A stretch of DNA of 64,000 nt from IMGVR_UViG_3300010885_076238:140312-204311, one strand, 5' to 3'; positions 7,835 to 25,778 are shown, counted from the first letter of the stretch. Numbers and translations: made by a program. Notes: generated by a model not told the origin, from the letters alone.

Positions 7835-7853
7835 TCTAAAGAGTTATGTAAAT

Positions 7854-8084: not shown

Positions 8085-8308
8085 TCTGCACAAATTCCAA
8101 GGAAACAAAATAAAATAAAAAATAATTTGTTTCCTCTACGGAATTAGGCTCCTATAATTAATATTTTATAGGGTCGAAACACCTGATGTTTATTTTTGGT
8201 GCAGCACTTTCTACTACTTATAGAGAGGCGGTCAAAAATAATTTTCCTCTTCGACCGTTATGCAGTATGGCAGCGATTGAGACTGCCAAGCTCAACTGGG
8301 AACATGAA

Positions 8309-8551
8309 ATGTATCTGGTTCTGATGATTAGCAACAACCGCGTCACCTACGCAAAGGCGTTTGACCAGTGGGATTCGGCTGTGCTGTGTGCTGACAACGT
8401 GGTTATGGATATTGCCGGGGTTTCAAACGATATGCTCGATTGGGAGAACGGCGATTACCGCACGGTCTACGAGCATACAAACGGCACTACAGTGACGATT
8501 GAGACGCTGGACGGGCCGGGAGCTAAGAGTTCGGAAATTCTTGGTTCGTAA
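8309..8551 (+). CDS. Hypothetical cassette protein
   Basis: Start re-assigned downstream of promoter and leader hairpin. Confidence 0.6.
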   Translation: MYLVLMISNNRVTYAKAFDQWDSAVLCADNVVMDIAGVSNDMLDWENGDYRTVYEHTNGTTVTIETLDGPGAKSSEILGS

Positions 8552-8626
8552 GAAATAATTTTCGATCTAGTTCGTTATCCCAATGTGGCAGCGATTGAGA
8601 CTGCCGCAGCAACCGGAGCAAAAAAG

Positions 8627-8872
8627 ATGAAGAAAAATGTTTGGTTGAGTTCTGACCCCGCAAACACCGAGGGCGGAGACATGGGCTTCTGGTGGAATCG
8701 TGGTTGCAACAGCATTGCCGCTGTCTCTGTTGATGAAACCGGGCTGCGTTTCGATGGCAGCGACTTCACGGTCGTCATCGACAACCCAGGCCAGACCAAC
8801 GAGAGCGTGAAAGTGCTGGTCAACGACGTGGTCGTCTTCGGTTCTGTCAAGACCAAGGCCAAGGCGAGTTGA
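8627..8872 (+). CDS. Hypothetical cassette protein
   Basis: GGAG RBS after the leader hairpin. Confidence 0.6.
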   Translation: MKKNVWLSSDPANTEGGDMGFWWNRGCNSIAAVSVDETGLRFDGSDFTVVIDNPGQTNESVKVLVNDVVVFGSVKTKAKAS

Positions 8873-8878
8873 GTCCTA

Positions 8879-8910
8879 CCCTCCCCTGCCCATCAAGGGC
8901 AGGGGAGGGA
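8879..8910 (+). terminator. GC-rich hairpin between cassettes (no U-tract)
   Basis: ccctcccctgccc-atcaa-gggcaggggaggg. Confidence 0.55.
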
Positions 8911-8959
8911 GCTAGAAAATAATTTTCAATCCAGTTCGTTATACAAGTAGGAGAAAAAA

Positions 8960-9322
8960 ATGAGAATTACTGCTAAAGAAGCTGCTGATCGTTTGCGTGT
9001 GAGTTATGTAGTTGCTGCGGGCATCATGGCCCACCTAGAAGAGACAGGCGCAGCGAAGGTTGTGGAAAAGAAGTTCCATGCCAGCGGGAAGGGAAAGCCG
9101 ACTCGCGTGTATGAAGTTGAACAGCATACTGTGCTGAACTTCGGAGACGTTGCTGCTGCTGCCGCCGCACCCGTAGTCGAGCCAGTTGTAGTCGAGCCAG
9201 TTGTGTTCACGACTCCGGTTGTCGAGGCTCCGGCTGTTGTCGAGGTTGTCGAGGAGAAGATCGAAACGCTCGACCATGTAGCGGCTGCGTTGGCTCGACT
9301 CAAGGCCGACAACGCCGCGTGA
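8960..9322 (+). CDS. Small winged-HTH-like protein, paralog 2
   Basis: TAKEAADRLRVSY...GKGKPTRVYEV with a low-complexity V/E/P linker. Confidence 0.75.
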   Translation: MRITAKEAADRLRVSYVVAAGIMAHLEETGAAKVVEKKFHASGKGKPTRVYEVEQHTVLNFGDVAAAAAAPVVEPVVVEPVVFTTPVVEAPAVVEVVEEKIETLDHVAAALARLKADNAA

Positions 9323-9363
9323 AATAAAAATTGATTTATTTCGTTATCTGATTAGGAGAAACA

Positions 9364-9750
9364 ATGACCACTACAAATCGTTCCCCCTACACTGCCGCTG
9401 TACTTGAAGCCGACAGTCACACCACCCTAATGGGATGGGTTCGTGACAATCACGAAATCCCCGGCGATTTTCTGCTCAAGGGACACCATTGCACTGCCGA
9501 CACTAAGCCCGCCGCAAAAAGCTTGGCAGGCCATATGGTCGGCCAGCGTGTCGAACTGCGTGTTGTTCGATTCGGTCGGCTTGAAGGAATTATGGCAGTA
9601 GAAGTAGAAACTGTGATGCCATCGAAGAATACTCGAAAGCACGTTACGATTTGCCATGCACCCGATGTCAAGCCCATGATGTCAAACAGCATAGTCGAAT
9701 GGGTTGATGTGCAGCCGTTCATCCTGTACGGGGTAGTGCAGGAGGTGTAA
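9364..9750 (+). CDS. Hypothetical protein (possible 2H/PNK-associated-like fold)
   Basis: HHCT and HVT motifs; RBS AGGAG. Confidence 0.55.
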   Translation: MTTTNRSPYTAAVLEADSHTTLMGWVRDNHEIPGDFLLKGHHCTADTKPAAKSLAGHMVGQRVELRVVRFGRLEGIMAVEVETVMPSKNTRKHVTICHAPDVKPMMSNSIVEWVDVQPFILYGVVQEV

Positions 9751-9837
9751 AGGCGAACACCTAATGTCTATAAAGCGGTTGGCTAGATAGCATAAAATAA
9801 AAATTGATTTATTTCGTTATCTGATTAGGAGAAATTC

Positions 9838-10014
9838 ATGGAAAATTTCGTAGGAAAAACTGTTGCGTCGGTAGAGTACCCATCCAAGTACGCCCGAGTA
9901 GTTTTGACCTTTACTGATGGCACGAAGTTGCTTATAAAGGAAGTTGGGTACGAAGGTGAACTTGAGGTTCGAGTCGATGGAACTGTTGTGGAAGGCGAAG
10001 AGGATGGAGAGTAA
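9838..10014 (+). CDS. Small hypothetical protein (58 aa, absent from the ORF track)
   Basis: Promoter + AGGAG + MENFVGKTVASVEY... Confidence 0.6.
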   Translation: MENFVGKTVASVEYPSKYARVVLTFTDGTKLLIKEVGYEGELEVRVDGTVVEGEEDGE

Positions 10015-10025
10015 GTAAACACCTA

Positions 10026-10343
10026 ATGTCTATAAAAATGCAGTGGATTAGTTTTTTCGGCCCGCGCCGTCCAATCAACGGACAAAAGATTTTCTACTAC
10101 GGCGAGCATATCGGCGTTTGGAGTGGAACGTACAGCCTAGACTGGAATGATCCGGTTAGCCCCCATAGGATAATTTGTGGGGAAAAGCCAAGCAAGGAAA
10201 CCTCCGATGTATTGGCTGAGTACGGCTTGAACAATATCACCATGATTGTAGATCGAATGGATGCTCCTTGGTGGATGCCAGACGAGGGTCAGCCCAAGCC
10301 AGAAAAGCCAGATCAAAATTACCCGCCAGAATATCCAAAATAA
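10026..10343 (+). CDS. Hypothetical protein
   Basis: ORF overlapping the box at 10017. Confidence 0.6.
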   Translation: MSIKMQWISFFGPRRPINGQKIFYYGEHIGVWSGTYSLDWNDPVSPHRIICGEKPSKETSDVLAEYGLNNITMIVDRMDAPWWMPDEGQPKPEKPDQNYPPEYPK

Positions 10344-10380
10344 TTTTTAGTTCGGTTCGTTATACAAATAACAATACAAT

Positions 10381-10509
10381 ACGCGGCCTGCTGAAGTAGG
10401 TGGAACGTAACCACCTATACCAGTTCTGTGCGAGGAACTGGCAGGGGTAGTAGGGCAATCGCAAGCCCGAAATGAGAAAAGCCACAGCAATTACCACCGT
10501 GGCCCGCGT
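10381..10509 (+). ncRNA. Structured RNA 1 of cluster
   Basis: Closing acgcgg/ccgcgt; hairpins taggtgg/ccaccta, ccagttc/gaactgg, gggc/gccc, gccac/gtggc; follows a promoter. Confidence 0.65.
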
Positions 10510-10524
10510 AAAAATAATTTATTA

Positions 10525-10628
10525 CAATGCGTAGGTTAAGCGTTGAGCAGCCAGCGGTTGGCGGGAGTACTACCACAACCGTCCGTTAGACCAGCATAGG
10601 AAAGTGTGGGTAAAATCCCGCCGCATTG
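10525..10628 (+). ncRNA. Structured RNA 2 of cluster
   Basis: Closing caatgcg/cgcattg; internal cggttg/caaccg. Confidence 0.55.
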
Positions 10629-10650
10629 ATAATTTTAGTTATGTGATTAG

Positions 10651-10787
10651 AGAGAACAAGACAGGGGACGCAAGGTTGTTCGCGGCTGTCGAAGGCCAAG
10701 ACGGTTCGCTAAATAGACCTACGTTGAAGCAACATAGATCGCGTTCTGTGGCCGGTGCGACTCCGGGCGTCTCCTGTCCTGTTCTCT
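10651..10787 (+). ncRNA. Structured RNA 3 of cluster, with tRNA-like acceptor/T-arm end
   Basis: ~20-bp closing stem agagaaca-a-gacaggggacgc/gcgtctcctgtc-c-tgttctct; T-arm-like ccgg-tgcgact-ccgg. Confidence 0.65.
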
Positions 10788-10822
10788 TGAAAAATAATTT
10801 TCCTTTCTGTTCGTTATGTGAT

Positions 10823-10939
10823 TGTGGTGGGTTGCAAGGCCGGATGAACGGCTCCCCAATGGCTGTCATGAAAGCCGGGAAGTTGAATAGGTGGTCAAGT
10901 CGATGGTTTCAAACCAAAGGCGAATCCACTCACCCACAT
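10823..10939 (+). ncRNA. Structured RNA 4 of cluster
   Basis: Own CGTTAT promoter; closing tgtgg.tgggt/actca.cccaca; T-run at the end. Confidence 0.5.
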
Positions 10940-10961
10940 TTTTTCTTCTAATTTCTATATA

Positions 10962-11029
10962 CAGCAGAGAGAACTCGCCAAGAGGCCCAACGGCCACACT
11001 GGGAGAATTGGAGTAAGGAGCCTCTGCTG
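10962..11029 (+). ncRNA. Structured RNA 5 of cluster, or leader of the next gene
   Basis: Closing cagcagag/ctctgctg. Confidence 0.4.
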
Positions 11030-11047
11030 GGTTTCAAAGGAGTAAAT

Positions 11048-11203
11048 ATGTCAAAGCAAGAAATGATCGAAATTGTGGATTCTCAGGTCAAGTACGGACT
11101 GCCCAGAGAGGAAGCAATCCGCCTACTAGCTTTCTTTATGGACGAAGATGATCCAGAGAACAACGCAGAGATTTGGTTTCAGCAAAAAATCGGCGGCGGT
11201 TGA
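11048..11203 (+). CDS. Small hypothetical protein
   Basis: AAGGAG RBS, MSKQEMIEIVDSQ... Confidence 0.55.
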   Translation: MSKQEMIEIVDSQVKYGLPREEAIRLLAFFMDEDDPENNAEIWFQQKIGGG

Positions 11204-11248
11204 AAATAATTTCTGCCCTAATTCGTTATAAAATCAAGGAGATCATCA

Positions 11249-11473
11249 ATGACACTTGCAGAAGCCCGCAAGATGGCCCAAGAAGATGCTGACGATTATC
11301 AAGTCGTCGTCAATCTGATCTATGACAAACTCGCTGAGTACCCTGTGACTGACGATGGCGAGGACAACCGATACGGATTCTGTGCAGTAGGTGCTATGGA
11401 CATTATGTTTCCAGAATACCTCAAGGATTACTGGAACGTAGTGGGCGTGGTAAGCCCCAAGGGAGGAATATGA
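11249..11473 (+). CDS. Hypothetical protein
   Basis: Promoter + RBS. Confidence 0.65.
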   Translation: MTLAEARKMAQEDADDYQVVVNLIYDKLAEYPVTDDGEDNRYGFCAVGAMDIMFPEYLKDYWNVVGVVSPKGGI

Positions 11474-11658
11474 AAATGTTAGGAAGTTGCCATTGCGGAT
11501 CAGGCCAGCCTAGTTGGTGGGAAAACGATGCCAGAGGAATCCCTCTTGCAAGAATTTGCGAAAAGTGCAAAGAGGAAAAGCTGTCTAAGTACCGACCAGA
11601 AGTTCTGTCTAACTCAAACTACGAGGCAGACGAACCTATAGAGCCAGAAGATTACTAA
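11470..11658 (+). CDS. Small Cys-rich protein (CxCGSG...DARGI...CxxC)
   Basis: Zn-binding-type motif; coupled gene. Confidence 0.7.
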   Translation: MKMLGSCHCGSGQPSWWENDARGIPLARICEKCKEEKLSKYRPEVLSNSNYEADEPIEPEDY

Positions 11659-11673
11659 ACGGAGAGAATAATT

Positions 11674-11901
11674 ATGCAGGCGGACATAGCCACCTTGACC
11701 GTCAAGGCGAGGCAAAAGGCTCGCAAATGGGTCAAGGAAAGGCTGAAAATGCACCCCGGCAAGTTCGTGGTCAAACAAGGTGAGCAGTCTTGTCCTTGCT
11801 GGAACGGGGAAAACGCTATTCAGTTAGAGAACACGACCGACAGATGGAGCGGTTGGTTCCCCGTAACAGACATAGAAATCTCTAGCGACAATGAAAAATA
11901 A
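11674..11901 (+). CDS. Hypothetical protein
   Basis: GGAG RBS. Confidence 0.6.
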   Translation: MQADIATLTVKARQKARKWVKERLKMHPGKFVVKQGEQSCPCWNGENAIQLENTTDRWSGWFPVTDIEISSDNEK

Positions 11902-11927
11902 TTTTCACTTTTACTCGTTATCTATAT

Positions 11928-12158
11928 ATGGAACATTTAGGACATCAAAAATGGTGGTGCGACGTTTGCGACTCCAGGCAAGTGGATAGCAAAGATTCCA
12001 CAACTGGTTCGTACTATCAAGTAGCTGGCATGGAACATCCAGCCAGATCAAAAGAAGAAAAATGGACATCCATTATTTTCGCTGTCTGCTGCGAGTGTGA
12101 ACCAATCAAGGCTTTGCACAAAATCAAAGTCGAAAACCAAGTCGTTCGTAAAAATTAG
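11928..12158 (+). CDS. Small Zn-finger-like protein
   Basis: CxxC...CCEC. Confidence 0.55.
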   Translation: MEHLGHQKWWCDVCDSRQVDSKDSTTGSYYQVAGMEHPARSKEEKWTSIIFAVCCECEPIKALHKIKVENQVVRKN

Positions 12159-12284
12159 CTAATATACAAAATATTAATTAGCCAATAATTATTATTTTCA
12201 ACACCTGATGTTTATATGGAAACTAGACGGGGGCAATAAAATAATTTTCATTTCAAATCGTTATGTTCTTAGGAGGACAATGAA

Positions 12285-12467
12285 ATGAAAATTTGCACCA
12301 CCGATTCTATCTTGGAAAGCATCACTCAAAACAAGTTTGATGATGAATCCAATTCTCGTTCTGGCCGCATGAGTGGCGAAATGATGCGAATTGCCGACGA
12401 AGTCGAGCAAGAGCTAGAGGACGAGTTCATGGACGAGTGTGACGAGAGCAACAGGGAAGCGGCGTAA
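12285..12467 (+). CDS. Small acidic protein
   Basis: AGGAGG RBS; ends in -EAA. Confidence 0.6.
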   Translation: MKICTTDSILESITQNKFDDESNSRSGRMSGEMMRIADEVEQELEDEFMDECDESNREAA

Positions 12468-12555
12468 AGCCAGCATTTCCAAGGGTTTGCTGCTTGTCTC
12501 TTTTTTTTGGAAGCGCCGACCGACATTGGTCGTAGTTATCTCACAGGAGGAACCT

Positions 12556-12906
12556 ATGTATCGAAATTATGAAGAATACGAATCTGCTTTCGACAAGTTG
12601 CTAGATAACGCTCCTGCAAACGTCAAAATCAAAAAAAAGACGAGACAGGAGTTCGATTACGAAAATTATCGTGACAAGATCGAATGGTATTTGATGGAGG
12701 AATGGGGCACTGAGCCTTTCCACGAAATTTTCTTCGGCCATATCAGTGAGATCGAATCGGACGAGCCTACTCCCGAAGATTTTCGTGCAGAGGAATTGCA
12801 TGGCTGCGTCTATGACATCATCGACAGTTGCTACGAGAAGAAATTCAGCGTGAATCAGGCAGCGTCGAAAATTTATTTGTATTTGAAAAAAGAGAAGGCC
12901 ATCTAA
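12556..12906 (+). CDS. Acidic hypothetical protein
   Basis: AGGAGG RBS before ATG 12556. Confidence 0.65.
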   Translation: MYRNYEEYESAFDKLLDNAPANVKIKKKTRQEFDYENYRDKIEWYLMEEWGTEPFHEIFFGHISEIESDEPTPEDFRAEELHGCVYDIIDSCYEKKFSVNQAASKIYLYLKKEKAI

Positions 12907-12984
12907 TCAGGGCAAAATTTTTTTCGGTTCGGATCGTTATACCAATACAGGCCATGTGGCCTACTAACAAGGAGAAAAAGAAAA

Positions 12985-13341
12985 ATGCGTTTGACTGCGA
13001 AAGAAGCCGCCGAAAGGCTGAGTGTGAGTTATGTGATTGCCGCCGGTATTATGTCTTATCTTGAGGACACTGGTAAGGCCAAGGTTGTAGAGAAGAAGTT
13101 TCATGCAAGTGGGAAGGGTAAGCCAACCCGTGTCTATGAAGTAGATCAACTTACAGTGATTGACTTTGGTGATGCCGTTGCAAAGCCAGAAGTCGTGACG
13201 GTGACGGAGACAGTTGCAGTGACGGAGACGGTTGCGGTGACGGAGACGCTTCCAGCCGTGGCAGAGATTGCAGAGGATCGCGTCGAAACGCTGGATCATG
13301 TCGCTGCGGCTCTGGCTAGGCTGAAGTCTGAGGCTGCGTAA
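12985..13341 (+). CDS. Small winged-HTH-like protein, paralog 3
   Basis: N- and C-termini near-identical to 8960; VTETVA repeats in the linker. Confidence 0.75.
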   Translation: MRLTAKEAAERLSVSYVIAAGIMSYLEDTGKAKVVEKKFHASGKGKPTRVYEVDQLTVIDFGDAVAKPEVVTVTETVAVTETVAVTETLPAVAEIAEDRVETLDHVAAALARLKSEAA

Positions 13342-13522
13342 TACGCGCCCATAGGAATCCATCCCCCTCTGCTTCTCAATCGCGGAGGGGGGTGGATAAA
13401 CCTAAATTTGTGCTACTATAATAATACAACAATCGGCCGTCCGGCCGTGCCGCCACAAGCGCCACGGGTTGATTCCCCACGGGAGCCAGCCATCAAAGAC
13501 CGGCCCGCCGATTATTGCACAA

Positions 13523-13606
13523 GCCGAAGTGGCGGAATTGGCAGACGCGCCAGACTCAAAATCTGGTGTCCAAAAAGACGTGTGGGTTCAATTCCCACCT
13601 TCGGCA
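13523..13606 (+). tRNA. tRNA-Leu(CAA)
   Basis: GCCGAAG/CTTCGGC acceptor, CCAGA-CTCAAAA-TCTGG, long variable arm. Confidence 0.95.
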
Positions 13607-13691
13607 GTAACACCTACCGTTTATTATTAATTAATAATAAACCTATAAAATAATTAGTTCGCTCAATCGTTATTTGGTATGGAGGAAGGAT

Positions 13692-13868
13692 ATGTTTAGC
13701 AGGGAAGATTTACTTACAATTTTAGCGTGTTTGGAATGTAAAGAATACAACACGCAAGGCAAGATAGATTCAAGAGTTCCAGTAGAGGACGGCAAGAACG
13801 TCATCGACATCGTTGATATGTTGAACAGGATCGAAAAAATCAAAACTGTTATCAGGGATCAATTGTAA
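13692..13868 (+). CDS. Small hypothetical protein
   Basis: Promoter + GGAGG RBS. Confidence 0.55.
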   Translation: MFSREDLLTILACLECKEYNTQGKIDSRVPVEDGKNVIDIVDMLNRIEKIKTVIRDQL

Positions 13869-13937
13869 ATTCCTAAAATAATTAGTTCGCTCAATCGTTA
13901 TTTGGTATAGGGAAGATTTACTAAAAGAGAGAGTCTT

Positions 13938-14177
13938 ATGATTTTCAAACTGTTCAATGGAGCAAAAACTACAGAGGCTTGGAATCCTAATAGCCCTGAG
14001 TTTATTGACGATTGGAAACCGGAAGAACACATCATCAAGTGTCAGGCGGTTCAAGTTACTTACTGCAATCATATCAAAGTTCATGTTGACGATGATATGA
14101 TCGAGTTTCACTGGGACGAAGATGGCTTTATTGAACACGATGGCGTGTTTTATGGCGATTTCATCGTAGAAGGATAA
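13938..14177 (+). CDS. Hypothetical protein
   Basis: Promoter duplicated from 13647. Confidence 0.6.
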   Translation: MIFKLFNGAKTTEAWNPNSPEFIDDWKPEEHIIKCQAVQVTYCNHIKVHVDDDMIEFHWDEDGFIEHDGVFYGDFIVEG

Positions 14178-14184
14178 ATTACAA

Positions 14185-14856
14185 ATGTCTAACAACTATG
14201 TCACAATGAACATAAGAATGTATGCCTCCAAGCCAGATAAGGTTATGGAGCAAGTCATTCTAAATCTTGGATGGGAATGGTACTCAGCAAGCAAGGCTTG
14301 TGAATACGCCAGAAAAGTTATAAAGGGCAGATGGATCAAAGGCGAAAGAAAGATCAAGAAAAATCCATACTCCGCCTACTTTTATGCTCGCCATGTTATC
14401 GGAGGAAGATGGCCCGAAGCAGAAAATTTTATCTTGAAGGATGAACACGCCTCTTACTTGTACGCTAAGTATGTTCTCAAAGGCAGGTTTGAGAAAGCAG
14501 AGAAAAAGAGAGGGCTTTTCAAGTCGCCTAGAGAAATATACTTCTACTCCAAATACGTTATGAAGTCTAGGTGGAAAGAAAAAGAAAAGTCTATGGTAGA
14601 CTTTGTTGTAAAAAATACCTGGGGCTTTGAGAAGGTTTTCGACTACTGTATTCAGATCAGAAAAGAAAGATGGCCCCAAATTGAAGGCGAAATTGTAAAG
14701 TCCAGCAAAGAATACATCGGTCGTTATTTCAAATTATTGAAAGAAAAGGACAAGGAAGAATTTTATAATAAAGTTCTCGCCCAGTCTCTCGTAGAACCAA
14801 GAAGTTCTTGGCAACGAAACGAAGCCAGAGAATTTATCAAAACTATGAAAAACTAG
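14185..14856 (+). CDS. Helical repeat protein (YA..V.KGRW.EAE repeats)
   Basis: About five internal ~25-aa repeats. Confidence 0.7.
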   Translation: MSNNYVTMNIRMYASKPDKVMEQVILNLGWEWYSASKACEYARKVIKGRWIKGERKIKKNPYSAYFYARHVIGGRWPEAENFILKDEHASYLYAKYVLKGRFEKAEKKRGLFKSPREIYFYSKYVMKSRWKEKEKSMVDFVVKNTWGFEKVFDYCIQIRKERWPQIEGEIVKSSKEYIGRYFKLLKEKDKEEFYNKVLAQSLVEPRSSWQRNEAREFIKTMKN

Positions 14857-14878
14857 TTTGAACATACTATTATAAAGT

Positions 14879-15139: not shown

Positions 15140-15328
15140 CCCGCACAAATTTAGACGGCAATATCTTATAAATATTCTGCCTCGCATTCGTTACGACTAA
15201 AAACATATAAAATAATAATTGTCATAAAAATAAAAATCACCTGATGTTTATATGGTCAGCAGAAGGATAAAAATAATTTTCGATCCAGTGCGTTATGGAA
15301 ATATAAGTTCCACAACCGGAGAAAAGGT

Positions 15329-18796: not shown

Positions 18797-18926
18797 CGGG
18801 GGGCAGCCGCCCAACTCAACACCTAATGTTTATTGGCAAAGGTGAGCAATAAAAAATAAATTCCCAGCTAATTCGTTATCTAGTATGGCCGCGACAGTGA
18901 CGGCCAAGCCAATCTAGGAAATAACG

Positions 18927-19268: not shown

Positions 19269-19324
19269 TTTTTTCGACTCTCATTCGTTATACAAATGTA
19301 GCCACCACCCCAAGCAGGAAAAAA

Positions 19325-19528
19325 ATGACTATCACAGAAGTCATCACGCCCGGCCCAGGCGGATTCAAATTTCTCAACATGACGAACGAGAAGTTCGACT
19401 CGTTCACCGCAGACGAAATCATTGCCGCTGCGGAAGCGGCCGGTCTGTGGACATACTACGAACTGGACGACGACGGGAAGCTGACCGGCTTGGCGATCAC
19501 CACGAAAGAAAGAGAGCCAAACGGATAG
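19325..19528 (+). CDS. Small hypothetical protein
   Basis: Promoter + AGGA. Confidence 0.6.
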   Translation: MTITEVITPGPGGFKFLNMTNEKFDSFTADEIIAAAEAAGLWTYYELDDDGKLTGLAITTKEREPNG

Positions 19529-19763
19529 CGGGCTTTGGCCCAATGCTCTAACACCTAATGTTTATAATCAACAGTGAGTTGCTTGCCAAAACCAAAGGAG
19601 CCGGACATGGAAACTTTTGAGCAGTGGTGCAAGAGGATGCAAGAAGAACACGATCAATGGATTTCAAGTCCCGAAGGACAAATCTGGATCAAGGGCTAAA
19701 AATTATTTTCGGTTTGATTCGTTATCAAGTATGGCCGATCATTCAACACCTAAGGAACAAGTC

Positions 19764-20078
19764 ATGAAAGCCAAAGAAGTGCAGATTGGACAGGAGTTCT
19801 ACACCAACTACGCGAGCATGGAACACTGCAAGCCGCTGTCTAACGTTCATCGTTGGAAAATGATCGCTCCAGAGCATCGGTTGGCGCAGCTTGTGCTTGT
19901 CACCGGGGACGTTTGCGATCACACTCGCATCATCGATGAAAAGGAAGAAGTGTTCGCCACAGCCGGTGAAGCTTGGCAAGATTGTGCGACTCAACTCAAC
20001 GCGATCATCGAAAAGATTCGTGAAGCCGTCAAGGATTGCGAGTCCAAAGTTCCCCGCCAGTGCAAGGAATCCGCGTGA
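19764..20078 (+). CDS. Hypothetical protein
   Basis: Promoter + AAGGA; start re-assigned. Confidence 0.6.
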   Translation: MKAKEVQIGQEFYTNYASMEHCKPLSNVHRWKMIAPEHRLAQLVLVTGDVCDHTRIIDEKEEVFATAGEAWQDCATQLNAIIEKIREAVKDCESKVPRQCKESA

Positions 20079-20137
20079 AAAAGGGGGCTTGGGAAACCAA
20101 GTCCCCAATAATTAACACCAAATGTCTATTATAGAGT

Positions 20138-20422
20138 ATGAGACTATTTATTGATGACATCAGAACTCCATCCGAAGACTACATCGTTCTCCGGTCTTCT
20201 GAGGATGCCATTCAATTCATAAAGCAAAATGGCTGGCCTGAGTTCATCAGTTTTGACCACGATCTTGGCGGCGACGATACCACTATGGTCTTTCTCAAAA
20301 GGCTTGTAAACGAAGTATGGGACGGCAAAACCATGCCGCCAGACTATATCGTTCATAGTGCCAACCCAATTGGATCGAAGAACATCGTGAGTTTCATGGA
20401 AAGCTGGAAGAAGTCAATCTAA
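20138..20422 (+). CDS. Cyclic-phosphate-processing receiver-like domain protein
   Basis: LFIDDIR...ISFDHDLG...VHSANPIG signature. Confidence 0.8.
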   Translation: MRLFIDDIRTPSEDYIVLRSSEDAIQFIKQNGWPEFISFDHDLGGDDTTMVFLKRLVNEVWDGKTMPPDYIVHSANPIGSKNIVSFMESWKKSI

Positions 20423-20496
20423 AAAATTTTTTTTACTTTCATTCGTTATACCAATATGGCAGCAATTGAGACTGCCGGATTACTAGGATTGCTCTA

Positions 20497-20574
20497 ATGT
20501 TTGGACTCGTTTCTATGATTTTGTTTAGCGTCGGAACTATTGGATTTTTCTACGTCACTAAGGAGGGCAACTAA
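20497..20574 (+). CDS. Putative 25-aa membrane peptide
   Basis: After leader hairpin + AGGA; MFGLVSMILFSVGTIGFFYVTKEGN. Confidence 0.45.
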   Translation: MFGLVSMILFSVGTIGFFYVTKEGN

Positions 20575-20726
20575 TGTTTATCGTAATTGAGCAGAAGGAA
20601 GACGGCACGACTCAGATTCTTTCGCCCGTAATCAACGACCAGAAAGAAGCAGAAGTAGAGGCTGCTTGGATTTCCCACCTGAACGGTTGGAGTTGCACAG
20701 TAAAGCAAGTGGATCAAGCCGCTTGA
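20574..20726 (+). CDS. Small hypothetical protein (50 aa)
   Basis: AAGGAGG RBS; TAATG coupling; ends in -QAA. Confidence 0.55.
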   Translation: MFIVIEQKEDGTTQILSPVINDQKEAEVEAAWISHLNGWSCTVKQVDQAA

Positions 20727-20858
20727 AACAATCGGCAGTAAACCTGCCACCCAACCCAAAAGGTTGGGCCATTAGCAAATACCTAATGTTTATTGTTGAA
20801 TCGAACCTGATAAAAATAATTTTCGATCTAGTTCGTTATAGATTTAGGAGGACGTTTT

Positions 20859-21071
20859 ATGACTAAGCCCGTTGAAATCTCAACCAAGGAAATGTGGGAA
20901 CTCTCAGCAGTGGGAGCCTGCATTCTTCTAGCTGTTCAAGAGATGGAAGAAGATGCTGTCGGCAGGCAAAAGGTGATCGAAGCGGGAAACCGTTTGTTCG
21001 ATCTCATGGGCAAAATTGGAGAACGAGATGATTGGTCATCCAGAAGCCCAAAAGGAGAGGAAAAAGTATGA
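20859..21071 (+). CDS. Hypothetical protein
   Basis: Promoter + AGGAGG. Confidence 0.6.
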   Translation: MTKPVEISTKEMWELSAVGACILLAVQEMEEDAVGRQKVIEAGNRLFDLMGKIGERDDWSSRSPKGEEKV

Positions 21072-21234
21072 AAAAAACTGTCGGAGCAACCAAGGCTCAC
21101 GCATCATGCGGATATTGCAAACACTTGCGCAAGTTCGGAAAGCGACTTGCCAATAAGGCTTCTCGCAAACACGGAAATAATTTTCGATTCAATGCGTTAT
21201 CAAATATAGAGAATCCCAACCCCGGAGAATAATC

Positions 21235-21465
21235 ATGTTCAAGAAGAAAACCGATGGTCGATTCCGTGTCGAGCTGAAGTATAAGAACGGCAGCGAAGCA
21301 TTCATGGTCAGCAACGACTACCAGCAAATCTGCCGCCTGTACGAGCTTGCCAGAACTCCCATTTGCGAAAATTTCACACAGTCGATCTACGAAGTGATCT
21401 TGTTCGACGGCGATAAGCCCCTTGCAAACTGGACTAACTCAGCCGCATTAGTCAAAGTGGCTTGA
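21235..21465 (+). CDS. Hypothetical protein
   Basis: Promoter + GGAG. Confidence 0.6.
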   Translation: MFKKKTDGRFRVELKYKNGSEAFMVSNDYQQICRLYELARTPICENFTQSIYEVILFDGDKPLANWTNSAALVKVA

Positions 21466-21473
21466 CAATCCTA

Positions 21474-21550
21474 GGCGATTCTGGGTAGGGCCGGTCTCAT
21501 GAGCCGGATTGGGTAGCACCCCCCGCGTGGTTCGATTCCACGACTCGCCA
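21474..21550 (+). tRNA. Atypical D-arm-less tRNA-like RNA, anticodon CAT
   Basis: Acceptor GGCGATT/ACTCGCC-A, anticodon arm CCGGT-CTCATGA-GCCGG, T-arm CGTGG-TTCGATT-CCACG; only 10 nt in place of the D-arm. Confidence 0.65.
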
Positions 21551-21585
21551 TTTAGAATGCGGTAAAATGCAACAAGGAGCAAACC

Positions 21586-21825
21586 ATGAATACTGAATTT
21601 TATGTGGGCGAACACCGTGGTATCTGGGTAGGCCCAGTCATCCGAAATAAACAGACGAATCATCCTGTGGCATTCGTCGCAGCCGGATCAGAACACTTTT
21701 CCGAAATATTATCCCTAGCACCAGAAATGCTTGAAGCACTACGGAAAATCAGGAATAACTCAGACAACGCGGAAGTCAACAAAATCGCATCAGAAATCCT
21801 ACTCAAGGCAACCAAACACGCCTAA
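21586..21825 (+). CDS. Hypothetical protein (APEMLEAL motif)
   Basis: AAGGAG RBS; common phage motif. Confidence 0.65.
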   Translation: MNTEFYVGEHRGIWVGPVIRNKQTNHPVAFVAAGSEHFSEILSLAPEMLEALRKIRNNSDNAEVNKIASEILLKATKHA

Positions 21826-22011
21826 TCGTCAACACCTAATGTTTATTTCCCGAACGGGACAATTCAGACAAAAATCAGGCAATTTATAATAATTATTCCC
21901 GCTCGGGAAAGTTAGGTAATCTGTGCAAGCCCATAAAAGAAAATAAAAAATCCAAGGCCCGATTGACGATAGATAAGGTACGGGACAGAAAACCATTCAA
22001 AGGAGTGAATC

Positions 22012-22278
22012 ATGTTGGCTTGGATCGGAATCGCAATAACCGCCGTTGGAATGATTTTTAGTAGCTATGAGTTCGTGAAAAAAAATCCAGAACTCTTGCC
22101 CAAAGTTCAAAACGTACAACTGCTGGCCCATCGTCAACGTCAATCAGCGTTCATGTACAGTCAAGTAAATTTGGCCTATGATGTTGTGAACGGAAAACAT
22201 TGGTTTCAACACCCAGACGGTCAGTGGAGAGAATTCCCACCAAAACCCTCTCAAGTCGATATGCAAAACAGCCGATAA
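22012..22278 (+). CDS. Membrane-anchored hypothetical protein
   Basis: N-terminal hydrophobic helix; AAGGAG. Confidence 0.6.
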   Translation: MLAWIGIAITAVGMIFSSYEFVKKNPELLPKVQNVQLLAHRQRQSAFMYSQVNLAYDVVNGKHWFQHPDGQWREFPPKPSQVDMQNSR

Positions 22279-22902
22279 ATAAAATAAGGAAAGGAATCCA
22301 AAATGAAAAAAATCAACTGGAACCAAATCGTCAACGCTCTTATTCTTGTCAAAATAGGACAAGACTTAGGAACCAACTCGCAACTTACCCAATCCATCCA
22401 TCATATCATCGACGTTATTGCTACGTTCGCTAATGCCTTTGTAAGAATATAAAATAATTTCTCGATCAGTTCGTTATACAATAGTGGCCGTCCCATTCTC
22501 AGGAGAGCAAACATGAACACTGACACCAACTGGACTTACGAGCGCGAGGGAGCCAAAGAGATGATCGCAAGGCTCGAAGAAGAAATTCAGAATTCGACCT
22601 CCAAGCAGGATCGAATCAACAAACAGGAAGAAATACAAAGACTCCAATCGTAAAGAGTCAAAAAATAATTTTCAATCCCGTTCGTTATACAATAGTGGTC
22701 AACTAAAGGTGCTGACTGAAAGTGACACACGGCGGACAAGGTGGCCGACCGCAGGATCAGCACCACTCTAAAGGATCAAAAATGTATCTGACTCTCAATG
22801 ATTGGATGATGCTCGTTGGACTGATTTCTTTCGCAGGATTCTGTTCCTACACTGCCCACGAAATTCAAGGTGCAATCCACAACTACTTACATGGAGAATA
22901 TA

Positions 22903-23247
22903 ATGATTTTTGAAGTTGAAATGCTCGCGTTCGGAAAACCAGGAGAAGTTCGCAAGGTCAATGTTCCCGATGAGGCTCTAACTCGCGCAAAAGAAGATAC
23001 AGACAATATTCTTGAAGCCGCGTTTTATTACGGCCAAAACGATTTCCAGCCGCAAAACCACCCGTCAGTAAGTGCTGGCGATGTGATCCGCTGGAAAGAA
23101 GAAAACTATCTGGTTGCTGGTATGGGTTTCAAAAAGCTGACCGATGAACAACTAAATGATTATCGATCTCTCGACCAAAACGATAAGTTCATCGGAAGAT
23201 GCCAAATTGAAATAGGCGAACCAGTAGTAGGACGCAGAAACAAGTAA
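22903..23247 (+). CDS. YodL-like protein
   Basis: PSVSAGDVI...YLVAGMGFKKL resembles the YodL signature. Confidence 0.6.
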   Translation: MIFEVEMLAFGKPGEVRKVNVPDEALTRAKEDTDNILEAAFYYGQNDFQPQNHPSVSAGDVIRWKEENYLVAGMGFKKLTDEQLNDYRSLDQNDKFIGRCQIEIGEPVVGRRNK

Positions 23248-23442
23248 CCTGCACAATTCCATCAAACCATCAAAGCCCTAATAAATAATAAATATCGCTT
23301 ACGAAAGTGATATTTATAGGGCTTTATCTAACACCTAATGTTTATAAAACATCGCTAGTCGAAAAAAATAATTTTCGATCCAGTGCGTTATGCCAATGTG
23401 GGCAGCAATTGAGACTGCCCCCGTTTTCAGGAGGTTTGAATC

Positions 23443-23652
23443 ATGGGTGACGAAGATTCCTTTCTCGATTCGCGTTGGGAAGAAATTTGCGAGTATGAAG
23501 ACTCGTACGAGCAAGAGGATTGCTTCGATGACTTCGACGATGAAGATGATGAATACGATTGCTTCAGCGAAGACGACAACGACGACTTTGAAGACGACTT
23601 CGCTGACGACAACTACGACGACTACGACGACTTCTACGAGGAAGCCGCGTGA
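23443..23652 (+). CDS. Extremely acidic small protein (DNA-mimic candidate)
   Basis: More than half D/E with spaced F/Y; promoter, leader hairpin, AGGAGG. Confidence 0.7.
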   Translation: MGDEDSFLDSRWEEICEYEDSYEQEDCFDDFDDEDDEYDCFSEDDNDDFEDDFADDNYDDYDDFYEEAA

Positions 23653-23797
23653 AAATAGGGGGCTTGGGAAACCAAGCTTCCCCCAACTATCAACACCTAA
23701 TGTTTATAATGCCAACCCGCCGGAAACTTCTCGAAGAAAAATAATTTTCCATTCAAATCGTTATAAATCATCGGCCCAAAACCCTGAGGATCAAATC

Positions 23798-24343
23798 ATG
23801 AGCTACGAAAACGCCCCCGCCACCATCATGCTCGCGACCCACTGCTGCTGCTGCGGTCGCCCACTGGTCGATGCTATCTCTGTTGAGATGGGTATCGGCC
23901 CCGATTGCCGTCAAGGTCGCACCGATGGCATTTCCAAAGAACAGCAAGAAATCTGCAACAAACTCACCCATGCCGCCGCTCTTGCCGCGCAGGAAGGTCA
24001 AGTCGAGAAGGTTCGCGCGATTGCCGCCGAAATTGCCGCTCTAGGTCTGACTGAATTGGCCGATAAGGTTCAGCACCGTTTCGTCAACGCTGAAAGATTG
24101 GCAAAGATCAATATCATTCAGACCGGCGACCGTCTGACCGTTACAACCCCGTGGAAACGTAGCAGCGACTTTGTTGCCGCATGGAGAACCATTCCCGGCA
24201 GACGATATGGCGGGGCCGGTAAGAACATCATCCCCCTTAGCAGCAAGGGTGAGTTGTGGAATCTGCTACAGAAGTTCTTCCCCGGCCAATTCGGCAAGGG
24301 GCCAAAGGGACTGTTCAGAGTCCCTAAGAACGAGGCGGCTTGA
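23798..24343 (+). CDS. DUF6011-like Zn-ribbon protein
   Basis: CCCCGRPLVD..S...GIGPDC; start re-assigned after the promoter at 23737. Confidence 0.75.
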   Translation: MSYENAPATIMLATHCCCCGRPLVDAISVEMGIGPDCRQGRTDGISKEQQEICNKLTHAAALAAQEGQVEKVRAIAAEIAALGLTELADKVQHRFVNAERLAKINIIQTGDRLTVTTPWKRSSDFVAAWRTIPGRRYGGAGKNIIPLSSKGELWNLLQKFFPGQFGKGPKGLFRVPKNEAA

Positions 24344-24567
24344 CTGCCTGCACAAATTATATGCCCCCGAAATCCAAATGGAGAGTAGGGGTCGCGTTAT
24401 ACAGAAAAAACTTTAGAAATAAATATTAATACCTAATGTTTATTTTTATTCGCGCCGGTAGCCGGTAGCCGGTCGAGTTCGCCGGTAGTAAAAAAATAAT
24501 TTCCGATCCGGTTCGTTATACCAATATGGCCGCGATTGAGACGGCCAGCCAATCGGGAGGATGGGAC

Positions 24568-24858
24568 ATGGCGACTTGGATCAACGGCGACCCGGTGAAT
24601 GTTGTTGCAGGCATGATCAGGAGCCGCTGGTTGCTTCTGCCCGCAACTTGGTTTGAATCAGGCATGGGCGTCAAAGTGGACGACGAACGCAAATTCGTCC
24701 ATGTGATCGACCGACGCGGAAAGCCCGTGGGCAATCCCATAAAGTTTTGGGATGATGCTCCGGCCGGTGGCGGATCAAAAGAAGATGCCATCAACGAGTG
24801 CAAAGCATTCGGAGAGACATACGCACAAATTTTCCGCCCCCGAAATCCACAAGGATAG
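24568..24858 (+). CDS. Hypothetical cassette protein
   Basis: Promoter, leader hairpin, GGAGG. Confidence 0.6.
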   Translation: MATWINGDPVNVVAGMIRSRWLLLPATWFESGMGVKVDDERKFVHVIDRRGKPVGNPIKFWDDAPAGGGSKEDAINECKAFGETYAQIFRPRNPQG

Positions 24859-25014
24859 TAGGGGTCGCGTTATACAGAAACGGCAGAAAATATTTGGCCT
24901 GCCACTTAACACCTAACGTTTATTTTTGATGGTGGGCAGCAAAAAATAATTTTCGGTTTGGTGCGTTATCTAGTATGGCCGCAATTGAGACGGCCAGCCA
25001 ATCGGGAGCTTGTC

Positions 25015-25209
25015 ATGATCGCCATCGTCATCGTCACCGCCGCGTACGTCGCTTTCGGCATCGCGGGGTACTCGTACGTCAACCGTTGGATTTGCCACGG
25101 CCTTGACGACGGCAATGAGTCTGGAACTGGCCTGTCGTGCTTGCACATTCTCAACCCCATCATGGTGGCGGTTGGAGCGAGAATAATGCTCGACAAGCTG
25201 TCCTCCTAG
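25015..25209 (+). CDS. Small membrane protein, copy 2
   Basis: Paralog of 18608 in a duplicated cassette. Confidence 0.7.
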   Translation: MIAIVIVTAAYVAFGIAGYSYVNRWICHGLDDGNESGTGLSCLHILNPIMVAVGARIMLDKLSS

Positions 25210-25343
25210 CGGAGGGCAGCCGCCCAACCAAACACCTAATGTTTATAAGTGAGCGAACGCGCGGCTCCCGAATAATTTTCAATTTCATTCGTTATCCAGT
25301 ATCGCCGCACTTGTGACGGCAGGCCGACCATAGGAACCAACCC

Positions 25344-25649
25344 ATGACCACCACTCGCGAAACGCTTCTGGCCGAGTTTGCCTCCGTCTACAGCCGCACA
25401 GGCTGGAGGGTCGCCGCTTCTCTCGACGGCATGACCGTGGATCAGTTGCAGACCACGCTCGACGGTCTGTACGAAGCCATCAGTGAGGAAAGGGAAAAGA
25501 TGGACGCTTGGTTCGCAAGACAGAACGAGGATGCTGAAATGTCTGCCCGTGAGTGGGAGCAGTTGCAGGCAAAAGCCGATGCTGAGGCTGCTGCCGAAGC
25601 TGAGTGGTCGAAGTGGCAACACCACTACGACAGGCTGGTAGGGGTGTGA
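25344..25649 (+). CDS. Hypothetical acidic helical protein
   Basis: Promoter, variant leader hairpin, AGGA. Confidence 0.65.
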   Translation: MTTTRETLLAEFASVYSRTGWRVAASLDGMTVDQLQTTLDGLYEAISEEREKMDAWFARQNEDAEMSAREWEQLQAKADAEAAAEAEWSKWQHHYDRLVGV

Positions 25650-25778
25650 CCCGCCTCATATCGAAACACCTAATGTTTATAATGGGCCTGAGTTAGCCGA
25701 AAATAATCCGCCCACCCAACCGTTATCAGTGTAGCGACCGCATATGTGACGGTCTCGCCTACCCTTGGAGTTCCTGCC

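What the first reader, a model, noticed from the sequence alone, without database searches (positions are those of the whole stretch)
8269..25754. Covarying bulged-A hairpin at the very 5' end of 13 early transcripts
Seen: 7-10 nt after the CGTTAT element, 13 cassettes carry a stem with a 9-nt loop. Stems are GGCCG/CGGCC, GGCAG/CTGCC, GCCG/CGGC and GACCG/CGGTC (compensatory changes). Loops are CGATTGAGA, CAATTGAGA, CGACAGTGA, CACTTGTGA and CATATGTGA; the invariant C...GA can form a C-G pair with a bulged A. The genes downstream are unrelated. Inference: a protein-recognised RNA tag (antitermination nut-like site, self-mRNA mark against a host-shutoff nuclease, translation enhancer or 5' stabiliser) defining a phage regulon.
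Basis: partly seen in the sequence, partly recalled or inferred. Interest (0 to 1): 0.85.

Follow-up and report, generated by a model that had tools for sequence, protein, structure and literature searches.

The report
Conserved hairpin starting phage early transcripts
Thirteen early gene cassettes of an uncultured 204-kb freshwater phage begin with the same small RNA hairpin, whose stem changes freely but whose loop is conserved; the hairpin recurs in related and unrelated phages, matches no described RNA family, and its function is unknown.

Summary
Thirteen hairpins lie at the stated coordinates, all on the + strand, each 5-7 nt after a CGTTAT promoter element.

By itself the window gives weak covariation. 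Its cassettes are paralogous copies, and its C:G to A:U swaps are also synonymous third-codon positions of an ATG-GCN-GCN-ATT-GAG-ACN-GCC reading.

Relatives fetched from metagenomes settle the question:
- 30 hairpins from three promoter types are 97% paired.
- 6 of 7 pairs show double changes.
- G.U outnumbers A.C 8 to 1, which points to sense-strand RNA.
- The loop is conserved as C-R-A-U-U-G-N-G-A.

The same 21-mer follows a sigma70-type promoter in unrelated high-GC phages. Leaderless and SD-first cassettes in the same phage place the predicted transcription start 5-6 nt after the hexamer, so the stem starts at +1 to +3.

Best reading: a portable 5'-terminal leader hairpin that shields the mRNA 5' end and is read through its loop by an unknown partner. 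The evidence does not support nut-like antitermination, a MAAIETA leader peptide, or a DNA operator. One candidate partner, a 16-bp hairpin at 13356-13395, has a loop complementary to the motif loop, but this is only a lead. Rfam and cultured-phage databases give no match.

The parts
8268..8288 (+). 5' leader hairpin TGGCAG-CGATTGAGA-CTGCCA. Hexamer at 8256-8261; main ORF starts at 8309.
8587..8605 (+). 5' leader hairpin GGCAG-CGATTGAGA-CTGCC (extendable to 8584-8608). Hexamer at 8573-8578; main ORF 8627-8872.
16369..16389 (+). 5' leader hairpin TGGCCG-CGATTGAGA-CGGCCA. Hexamer variant CGTTGT at 16357-16362; main ORF 16406-16987. Orthologous sites in L212, L375 and L376 carry other stems.
17065..17085 (+). 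5' leader hairpin TGGCCG-CGATTGAGA-CGGCCA. Hexamer at 17053; main ORF 17102-17338.
17504..17524 (+). 5' leader hairpin TGGCCG-CGATTGAGA-CGGCCA. Hexamer at 17492; main ORF 17546-18487 (DUF932).
   Evidence: The relative L382 keeps a hairpin before its DUF932. 76 other DUF932 loci have none.
18566..18586 (+). 5' leader hairpin TGGCCG-CGATTGAGA-CGGCCA. Hexamer at 18554; main ORF 18608-18796 (small membrane protein).
18886..18906 (+). 5' leader hairpin TGGCCG-CGACAGTGA-CGGCCA. Hexamer at 18874; main ORF 18927-19268.
20458..20476 (+). 5' leader hairpin GGCAG-CAATTGAGA-CTGCC. Hexamer at 20444; followed by a short ORF.
23400..23420 (+). 5' leader hairpin GGGCAG-CAATTGAGA-CTGCCC. Hexamer at 23386; SD-led ORF at 23443; a 317-aa DUF6011 reading frame runs 23390-24343.
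24527..24547 (+). 5' leader hairpin TGGCCG-CGATTGAGA-CGGCCA. Hexamer at 24514; main ORF 24568-24858.
24976..24996 (+). 5' leader hairpin TGGCCG-CAATTGAGA-CGGCCA. Hexamer at 24964; main ORF 25015-25209 (paralogue of 18608).
25304..25320 (+). 5' leader hairpin GCCG-CACTTGTGA-CGGC (weakest, -6.8 kcal/mol). Hexamer at 25290; main ORF 25344-25649.
25736..25754 (+). 5' leader hairpin GACCG-CATATGTGA-CGGTC (both stem changes are non-synonymous in the AAIETA frame). Hexamer at 25721; main ORF 25779-26207. The orthologue in L398 has GCCG-CACCTGTGA-CGGC.
1245..25726 (+). Family of about 45 promoter-like cassettes: AAAATAATTTTC, 9 nt, CGTTAT. The predicted start is an A 5-6 nt downstream. 13 cassettes carry the hairpin, about 10 start directly with an SD, and about 7 are leaderless (ATG at the predicted +1).
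6431..26315 (+). 15 copies of a terminator-like or processing motif, ACA-CCTAATGTTTAT(T/A), closing the cassettes. It often lies exactly 52 nt before the next CGTTAT.
13356..13395 (+). Candidate trans partner (a lead only): a hairpin with a 16-bp stem and the 9-nt loop UUCUCAAUC. The loop is complementary to GAUUGAGA of the leader loops. It lies between an ArsR-like gene (12985-13341) and tRNA-Leu (13523-13606).

Best explanation
The element is a cis-acting RNA stem-loop that forms the first 20-25 nucleotides of a subset of this phage's early mRNAs. It belongs to a portable unit made of a terminator motif, an AT-rich block, a CGTTAT hexamer, a start at A, the hairpin, a short spacer, a Shine-Dalgarno sequence and the gene.

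Shown:
- The stem is under selection for pairing while its sequence drifts.
- The 9-nt loop C-R-A-U-U-G-N-G-A is conserved.
- The mismatch polarity is that of the sense strand.
- The hairpin keeps the same place, directly after the -10-like element, under three different promoter types.
- It is attached by the phage lineage, not inherited with the gene.

Inferred:
- Transcription starts 5-6 nt after the hexamer, so only 0-2 nucleotides remain unpaired at the 5' end.
- That is fewer than RppH-type pyrophosphohydrolases and 5'-end-dependent RNases (RNase E/G, RNase J) need. The hairpin would therefore prolong the life of these mRNAs and keep the 5' AUG from being used as a leaderless start.
- The conserved loop would be the docking site for one trans-acting partner, protein or RNA, that treats the tagged mRNAs as a group.
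For: Structure:
- Exactly 13 copies in the window, E <= 3.4e-5.
- In 30 hairpins from the window, its relatives and an unrelated phage family, 97% of cells are paired and 6 of 7 pairs have changes on both sides. No shuffle out of 500 reaches any measure, and slid registers drop to 20-45% paired.
- G.U versus A.C mismatches are 8 to 1 on the sense strand.
- Loop positions 6 and 8 are invariant; positions 1, 3 and 9 are 27/29, position 5 is 26/29 and position 4 is 25/29.

Orthologous sites:
- The site before gene 16406 reads GGCCG, GGCAG and GTCAG with matching 3' arms in the window, L212 and L376.
- L375 and L382 differ by G.U versus A-U at one site.

Position:
- Leaderless cassettes have ATG 5-6 nt after the hexamer with ORFs of 69-193 aa. 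SD-first cassettes have AGGAG starting 6-8 nt after it. tRNA-Ile starts 9 nt after it.
- The same placement is seen after ATCGTATA-type promoters (L376, L398) and after TTGCCA-N17-TATAGT promoters of the GP88 phage family.
- In AR9, phiKZ and phiR1-37, the phiKZ-related jumbo phages studied experimentally, transcription starts 6 nt after the early promoter element (PMC5312081).
- B. subtilis RppH needs at least 2 unpaired 5' nucleotides (PMC3997798).

Not tied to the gene: 76 DUF932 homologues behind ordinary sigma70 promoters lack the hairpin.
Against: - No transcription start has been measured.
- A pure stabiliser needs no conserved loop, and no partner has been identified.
- No protein is shared between the window and the fetched parts of the GP88-family loci.
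- Only 13 of about 45 cassettes carry the hairpin, and nothing known distinguishes them except higher G+C.
- Two copies (25304, 25736) fold no better than shuffles.
- The host, and so its RNase set, is unknown.
Confidence: 0.45

Rival explanations
1. Kissing-loop control by a phage RNA. The loop of the very stable hairpin at 13356-13395 (UUCUCAAUC) pairs with the GAUUGAGA loops of 7-10 of the tagged mRNAs and co-ordinately alters their stability or translation. This could be the 'partner' in the best explanation rather than a separate mechanism.
For: - There are 8 consecutive Watson-Crick pairs between two 9-nt loops, and 11-12 if the stem ends open.
- It is the best loop among 1109 hairpins in the window, with dG -9.3 kcal/mol.
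- Only 4 of 20000 random 9-mer loops bind as well.
- It lies on the same strand in the early region.
- The apical 27 nt are identical in relatives L386-L388 although the flanks differ.
Against: - After correcting for the number of hairpins scanned, chance expectation is about 0.05-0.2.
- Relatives L375 and L382 keep the long hairpin and have leader hairpins, but their apical loop (GATGCAAATTT) is not complementary.
- The loops CGACAGTGA, CACTTGTGA and CATATGTGA would not pair.
- Expression and processing of this RNA are unknown.
Confidence: 0.12
2. Nut-like processive antitermination. A phage or host factor binds the nascent hairpin and makes RNA polymerase resistant to the cassette terminators.
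For: - The hairpin is promoter-proximal on the nascent RNA and has a conserved loop.
- The cassettes are separated by a conserved terminator-like motif.
Against: - No boxA-like sequence lies next to any hairpin: 9 matches against 10.3 expected, the nearest 88 nt away.
- The 9-nt loop is unlike boxB pentaloops.
- Canonical terminators are not enriched (21 found, 21.5 expected).
- Nearly every gene has its own promoter, so read-through is not needed.
- Strict placement at +1 to +3 is not a requirement of nut or put sites.
Confidence: 0.1
3. A leaderless mini-ORF (M-A-A-I-E-T-A...) translated from the 5' AUG and coupled to the main gene. On this view the hairpin is secondary.
For: - ATG or GTG sits at the predicted +1 in 17 of 22 cassettes.
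- All variation in the common window copies is synonymous.
- The frame ends on ATGA at the main start in 5 cassettes.
- The phage appears to use leaderless mRNAs.
Against: - There is no start codon at that place in 5 of 22 cassettes (TGG, GCG, ATA, GAG, TAG), and ATC at 25296 is at best doubtful. L007 and L295 (TCG) also lack one.
- The orthologous pair L375/L382 has ATG versus no start.
- The peptide is not conserved where the hairpin is: SPIVRL, TAYVTV, VGTVST.
- ATGA occurs at 11 of the 22 main starts, and the frame matches in 5 against about 3.7 expected (counted).
- The U and G of the AUG are paired in a stem of -10 kcal/mol.
Confidence: 0.07
4. A DNA-level element: an operator for a dimeric repressor, a cruciform, or an N4-type hairpin promoter.
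For: - It is an inverted repeat overlapping +2 to +22 of a promoter.
- ArsR-like winged-helix genes are conserved in the early region.
Against: - The arms vary freely while the asymmetric spacer is conserved, which is the reverse of a dimer operator.
- G.U-type mismatches are tolerated on the sense strand only (8 to 1).
- N4 promoter hairpins have 3-nt loops, act on the template strand and lie upstream of the start (from memory).
Confidence: 0.06
5. A functionless passenger: a leader fragment copied along with the promoter during cassette shuffling.
For: - The cassettes are clearly duplicated and shuffled.
- Half-copies exist at 19720 and 22472.
- L376 has a hairpin followed directly by another promoter.
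Against: - Compensatory changes occur at six of the seven pairs, including every pair of the 5-bp core stem.
- The loop is conserved across phages whose orthologous proteins are 57-88% identical.
- The hairpin is present in an unrelated high-GC phage family.
Confidence: 0.05

Closest known systems
5'-terminal stabiliser stem-loops of bacterial mRNAs (ompA, papA; Emory, Bouvet and Belasco 1992, as listed in PMC3997798)
   Same: A hairpin within 0-2 nt of the 5' end, upstream of a free SD. This is predicted to block access of RppH and 5'-end-dependent RNases.
   Different: Those act independently of sequence and occur on single genes. Here the loop is conserved, the element is reused on 13 genes, and it is shared between phage lineages. 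Stabilisation has not been tested.
PeSL / PmSL composite terminator-promoter cassettes of T4-like phages (PMC2839356, PMC4122927)
   Same: Short conserved regulatory cassettes flank ORFans in hyperplastic early regions and probably mediate shuffling. DUF932 homologues in T4-like contigs sit behind such sigma70 cassettes.
   Different: In PeSLs the stem-loop is a terminator upstream of a sigma70 promoter. Here the promoter is not sigma70-like, the terminator is a sequence motif without a hairpin, and the conserved hairpin lies downstream of the promoter in the transcript.
SAS / ESAS repeats of Cluster K mycobacteriophages (PMC3203893)
   Same: A repeated, oriented motif in front of a subset of unrelated phage genes, partly with inverted repeats. 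Its function is unknown and a role in initiation has been proposed.
   Different: The SAS is a 13-nt sequence 3-8 nt before the start codon that includes the SD, and the ESAS arms are 17 nt. No SAS sequence occurs in the window. The hairpin here is tied to the transcript 5' end, not to the start codon.
Lambda-type nut boxB, HK022 put
   Same: A promoter-proximal RNA hairpin on early transcripts, read on the nascent RNA.
   Different: There is no boxA, the loop is 9 nt rather than a GNRA-like pentaloop, there are many copies with one promoter each, and the position at +1 to +3 is strict.
Early promoters and unexplained 5' UTR motifs of jumbo phages (AR9, phiKZ; PMC5312081, PMC8244752)
   Same: An extended AT-rich conserved promoter element with the start about 6 nt downstream. 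AR9 early 5' UTRs carry a predicted motif of unknown function.
   Different: The consensus is different. phiKZ has no leaderless transcripts (PMC8244752). No RNA polymerase gene was identified in this window.

Membership tests
Any Rfam family | Score at or above the family's gathering threshold | tested here: not met
   In the whole window only tRNA and tmRNA pass the threshold. A permissive E-value scan of 16300-19000 gives two chance hits with E >= 3.
Lambda-type nut site | boxA (CGCTCTTA-like) a few nt upstream of the hairpin | tested here: not met
   There are 9 matches with up to 1 mismatch in 27 kb against 10.3 expected, and none is adjacent to a hairpin.
Lambda-type nut site | boxB: a 5-bp stem with a 5-nt GNRA-like loop | tested here: not met
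   The loop is 9 nt, C-R-A-U-U-G-N-G-A.
Lambda-type nut site | Terminators downstream that must be read through in a long operon | tested here: not met
   Intrinsic terminators are not enriched (21 found, 21.5 expected), and nearly every gene has its own promoter. A sequence motif that may terminate does exist.
5'-terminal stabiliser hairpin | Stem begins within about 2 nt of the transcript 5' end | tested here: inconclusive
   This is met by prediction only. Leaderless and SD-first cassettes place +1 at 5-6 nt after the hexamer, so the stem starts at +1 to +3. No start has been mapped.
5'-terminal stabiliser hairpin | Longer mRNA half-life that depends on the stem and on its position | not testable with these tools
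   This needs half-life measurements.
PeSL cassettes of T4-like phages | A terminator stem-loop immediately upstream of a sigma70 early promoter | tested here: not met
   The hexamer CGTTAT has G at -11, and there is an AT-rich block instead of TTGACA. The hairpin lies downstream of the promoter. The terminator motif has no hairpin.
SAS/ESAS of Cluster K mycobacteriophages | GGGATAGGAGCCC 3-8 nt before the start codon | tested here: not met
   There is no match with up to 2 mismatches.
N4-type hairpin promoter | A 5-7 bp stem with a 3-nt loop on the template strand, upstream of the start | tested here: not met
   The loop is 9 nt. Mismatch polarity is that of the sense strand (8 G.U, 1 A.C). 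The hairpin lies downstream of the predicted start. The family's features are recalled from memory.
Leader peptide / leaderless uORF | A conserved start codon and a conserved peptide or conserved coupling | tested here: not met
   There is a non-start codon in 5 of 22 cassettes and a doubtful ATC in one more. The peptide is replaced where the hairpin persists. The ATGA frame match is not above chance.
Loop-loop (kissing) antisense pairs such as CopA/CopT | Complementary loops on two stable hairpins, conserved together | tested here: inconclusive
   The complement is present in the window and in L386-L388. It is absent from the homologous hairpin of L375/L382.

The most novel reading that the evidence does not exclude
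The hairpin is an RNA 'address label'. Its conserved loop would be read by one trans-acting partner, either a conserved host protein or a phage RNA such as the complementary loop at 13356-13395. That partner would control a whole set of horizontally acquired, G+C-rich early genes. The same label is used by unrelated phages with different transcription machineries.
Probability: 0.25. Interest if true: 0.8.

Novelty: new variant of a known kind. Interest (0 to 1): 0.6.

Why it matters
How large uncultured phages organise early gene expression is almost unknown. Here a small RNA motif with good comparative support marks about a quarter of the early cassettes. It survives changes of promoter type and recurs in an unrelated phage family, which implies a shared and still unidentified reader or constraint.

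If the loop is a docking site, it would define a post-transcriptional regulon in phages. It would also give a simple handle (a 21-nt RNA) with which to fish for the partner. If it is only a stabiliser, it is still a compact, portable 5' element of possible practical use. The finding also yields a covariance model that can be run on large collections.

Tried and rejected
- Loose promoter pattern scan of IMG/VR: only noise; a wasted scan.
- Strict promoter pattern: only the source contig.
- Exact hairpin scans of GTDB genomes and JGI metagenomes: most hits are coding 'AAIETA' sequences with mixed, non-complementary stems. They are useful only as a negative control.
- Second loop-variant scan: only the already known GP88-family loci.
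- DUF932 homologues: no hairpin, so the element is not inherited with the gene.
- Shared proteins between the window and the GP88-family loci: none.
- Cultured-phage database: nothing.
- Pfam and PHROGs on the tagged genes: nothing.
- A pseudoknot between the loop CGAUUG and a CAAUCG just 5' of the SD (read off the leaders): exact in the three paralogous leaders 18554, 24514 and 24964, and in L375_4688. Homologous leaders do not keep it, the linkers are very short, and no statistics were run. Not pursued.
- K-turn, T-loop, anticodon-arm and CRISPR-repeat resemblances were considered by eye and did not fit.

Full report
**Context.** The window is the last 64 kb of a 204,311-nt uncultured viral contig, IMGVR_UViG_3300010885_076238. 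It carries 11 tRNA genes and a tmRNA. It has no near relative among cultured phages, and most of its proteins match no Pfam or PHROG family.

**The cassettes.** The first 26 kb are a one-strand array of about 45 small cassettes.
- Each cassette has an AT-rich block (AAAATAATTTTC), 9 nt, then CGTTAT. CGTTAT occurs 68 times against 25.8 expected.
- Many cassettes end in a second repeated motif, ACACCTAATGTTTAT(T/A). It has 15 copies on the + strand between 6431 and 26315 against about 1 expected, often exactly 52 nt before the next hexamer.
- Canonical intrinsic terminators are not enriched.

**Observation.**
- A covariance model built from them finds exactly these 13 in the window (E <= 3.4e-5, next hit E = 0.18).
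- They fold at -7 to -14 kcal/mol. Most beat shuffled controls, but 25304 and 25736 do not.

**Where the transcripts start.** No start has been measured, but the phage supplies internal rulers.
- About seven cassettes have no Shine-Dalgarno sequence and an ATG exactly 5-6 nt after the hexamer, opening ORFs of 69-193 aa.
- About ten cassettes have AGGAG beginning 6-8 nt after the hexamer.
- tRNA-Ile begins 9 nt after a hexamer.
- The start is therefore an A 5-6 nt after CGTTAT. This is the geometry reported for virion-polymerase early promoters in AR9, phiKZ and phiR1-37, the phiKZ-related jumbo phages studied experimentally (PMC5312081).
- In the hairpin cassettes that A is followed by UG, which pairs with CA at the 3' foot of the stem. 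The RNA would begin pppA followed at once by the hairpin, then 15-25 free nucleotides holding the SD.

**A caveat on the window's own covariation.**
- In 10 of 13 copies the 5' ATG opens the reading ATG-GCN-GCN-ATT-GAG-ACN-GCC.
- The stem swap C:G to A:U and the loop G to A change are all synonymous third positions of that reading.
- The cassettes are also paralogous, so the window alone cannot separate 'RNA structure' from 'leader peptide MAAIETA'.

**Relatives resolve it.** Exact-pattern scans mostly returned coding AAIETA sequences with mixed, non-complementary stems, a useful negative control. They also returned L212 and an unrelated family. Orthologues of two window genes led to further contigs of related phages.

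Related phages and their hairpins:
- These phages have the same cassette plan but drifted hexamers (CGTTAT/C/G, ATCGTATA, GGTTAT).
- New stems appear around the same loop: GTCAG/CTGAC, AGCAG/CTGCT, GAGCC/GGCTC, CGCAG/CTGCG, GACAG/CTGTC and GGCGG/CTGCC (G.U).
- At the orthologous site before gene 16406 the stem reads GGCCG, GGCAG and GTCAG in three phages.

The unrelated family:
- It has 60-65% G+C and a GP88-domain gene.
- It carries the identical 21-mer, or variants, 6 nt after a TTGCCA-N17-TATAGT promoter. The variants are GGTCG/CGACC, GGTCG/CGGCC, the loops CGATTGTGA and GCACAGTGT, and two 7-nt loops.

Statistics over 30 sequences:
- 97% of cells are paired and 6 of 7 pairs have double changes. 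No shuffle out of 500 reaches any measure, and slid registers fall to 20-45% paired.
- Non-Watson-Crick cells are G.U 8 times and A.C once, the polarity expected for sense-strand RNA.
- The loop is C-R-A-U-U-G-N-G-A, with positions 6 and 8 invariant.
- The proposed C-G pair with a bulged A never covaries. The A is absent or replaced by U in some relatives.

**The leader-peptide reading fails.**
- The start-position codon is not a start in 5 of 22 cassettes, plus a doubtful ATC in one more, and it is TCG in L007 and L295.
- One orthologous pair has ATG in one phage and no start in the other.
- The peptide is replaced (SPIVRL, TAYVTV, VGTVST) where the hairpin persists.
- The frame ends on ATGA at the main start in 5 cassettes. 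ATGA occurs at 11 of the 22 main starts, so about 3.7 frame matches are expected by chance (counted).

**The DNA-operator reading fails.** The arms vary while the asymmetric centre is conserved, and G.U pairs are tolerated on one strand only.

**The nut-like reading is weak.** There is no boxA, the loop is not boxB-like, there is no terminator enrichment, and there is one promoter per gene.

**The hairpin belongs to the phage's expression cassette, not to the gene.** DUF932, tagged here and in relative L382, sits behind ordinary sigma70 promoters without the hairpin in 76 other viral contigs. Tagged genes are richer in G+C (0.554) than other early cassettes (0.459; p = 3e-4), and the rest of the window is at 0.331. 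They look like imported genes.

**Mechanism.** What is constant across three promoter systems is the position. The core stem starts at +1 to +3 of the predicted transcript.
- That is the defining property of 5'-terminal stabiliser hairpins. B. subtilis RppH needs at least two unpaired 5' nucleotides, and RNase E and RNase J act from accessible 5' ends (PMC3997798 and references listed there).
- I therefore favour 5'-end shielding, which would also mask the terminal AUG from leaderless initiation. The conserved loop would add recognition by a partner.
- The shielding step is inferred from position. The partner is inferred from loop conservation and is unidentified.
- No protein is shared between the window and the fetched GP88-family loci.

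**One lead for the partner.** The sequence at 13356-13395 folds into a 16-bp stem with the loop UUCUCAAUC, complementary to GAUUGAGA.
- It is the best-matching loop among 1109 hairpins in the window.
- Only 4 of 20000 random 9-mer loops bind as well.
- The loop is conserved in relatives L386-L388.
- After correcting for multiple testing, chance expectation is about 0.05-0.2.
- Relatives L375 and L382 carry a different loop there although they have leader hairpins.
- It remains a testable hypothesis, not a finding.

**Comparison with known systems.**
- Nothing matches in Rfam or in cultured phages.
- The cassette logic resembles PeSLs of T4-like phages (PMC2839356, PMC4122927). The 'motif in front of a subset of genes' resembles SAS/ESAS of Cluster K mycobacteriophages (PMC3203893). 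The defining features of both were tested and not met.
- The promoter geometry resembles jumbo-phage virion-polymerase promoters, and AR9 also has unexplained 5' UTR motifs (PMC5312081).
- I rate this a new variant of a known kind: a real, well-supported RNA motif whose function is still open.

Noticed in passing
window 6431-26315 (15 sites, e.g. 18822, 20782, 24432, 24912): A repeated motif, ACA-CCTAATGTTTAT(T/A), occurs on the + strand only, at cassette 3' ends and often exactly 52 nt before the next CGTTAT. No hairpin accompanies it. It looks like a sequence-specific terminator or processing signal. Variants occur in the relatives (CTCCTGATGTTTATA in L386, TACCTAACATTTATCC in L398).
   Followed up: partly
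window 1275, 1651, 2979, 3698, 7032, 11916, 19720: These are apparent leaderless genes, with an ATG 5-6 nt after the CGTTAT hexamer, no SD and ORFs of 69-193 aa. Other cassettes start directly with AGGAG. The promoter is not sigma70-like (G at -11), which suggests a phage-specific polymerase or sigma factor.
   Followed up: partly
window 13356-13395 and 13427-13515: A very stable structured region (z = -5.6) lies between an ArsR-like gene and tRNA-Leu. Its first hairpin has a loop complementary to the leader-hairpin loop. The stem is conserved with covariation in L375, L382 and L386-L388.
   Followed up: partly
window 1-26000 versus 27000-64000: There is a strong compositional mosaic. Early cassettes have 0.35-0.55 G+C (hairpin cassettes 0.554), while the rest of the window has 0.331. 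The early genes look horizontally acquired.
   Followed up: partly
window 19720-19745 and 22472-22500: Two cassettes begin with ATGGCCG or GTGGCCG, the 5' arm of the hairpin, but lack the loop and the 3' arm. They are probably decayed copies.
   Followed up: no
L376 1081-1185: A promoter plus hairpin is followed, with no gene between, by a second promoter plus hairpin. This looks like a scar of gene loss by recombination between cassettes.
   Followed up: no
L378 (1075, 1829, 2826), L376 (1975, 2615): More distant relatives use another recurring leader, GTA(C/A)GAACGATC(C/A), in place of the hairpin. This includes the site before the orthologue of gene 16406.
   Followed up: no
window 18554-18610, 24514-24570, 24964-25017: In these three leaders, CAAUCG just 5' of the SD is complementary to the loop CGAUUG, so a pseudoknot or alternative pairing is possible (in 24964, whose loop is CAAUUG, with one mismatch). 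Homologous leaders do not conserve it.
   Followed up: partly
window 43909-44044 (- strand): Rfam reports a tRNA match spanning 136 nt that ARAGORN did not call. It may be a tRNA gene with an insertion or intron. A phage tmRNA with the tag GTNSYAMAA lies at 44553-44902.
   Followed up: no
L398 9817-11265: The related 245-kb phage contig carries a TnpB-like gene (Cas12f1-like_TNB) next to its early region.
   Followed up: no
L298-L373 (DUF932 loci): DUF932 genes in many 30-240-kb viral contigs sit behind near-consensus TTGACA-N17-TAGAAT promoters. These are preceded by a small hairpin and a T-run, which is PeSL-like.
   Followed up: no
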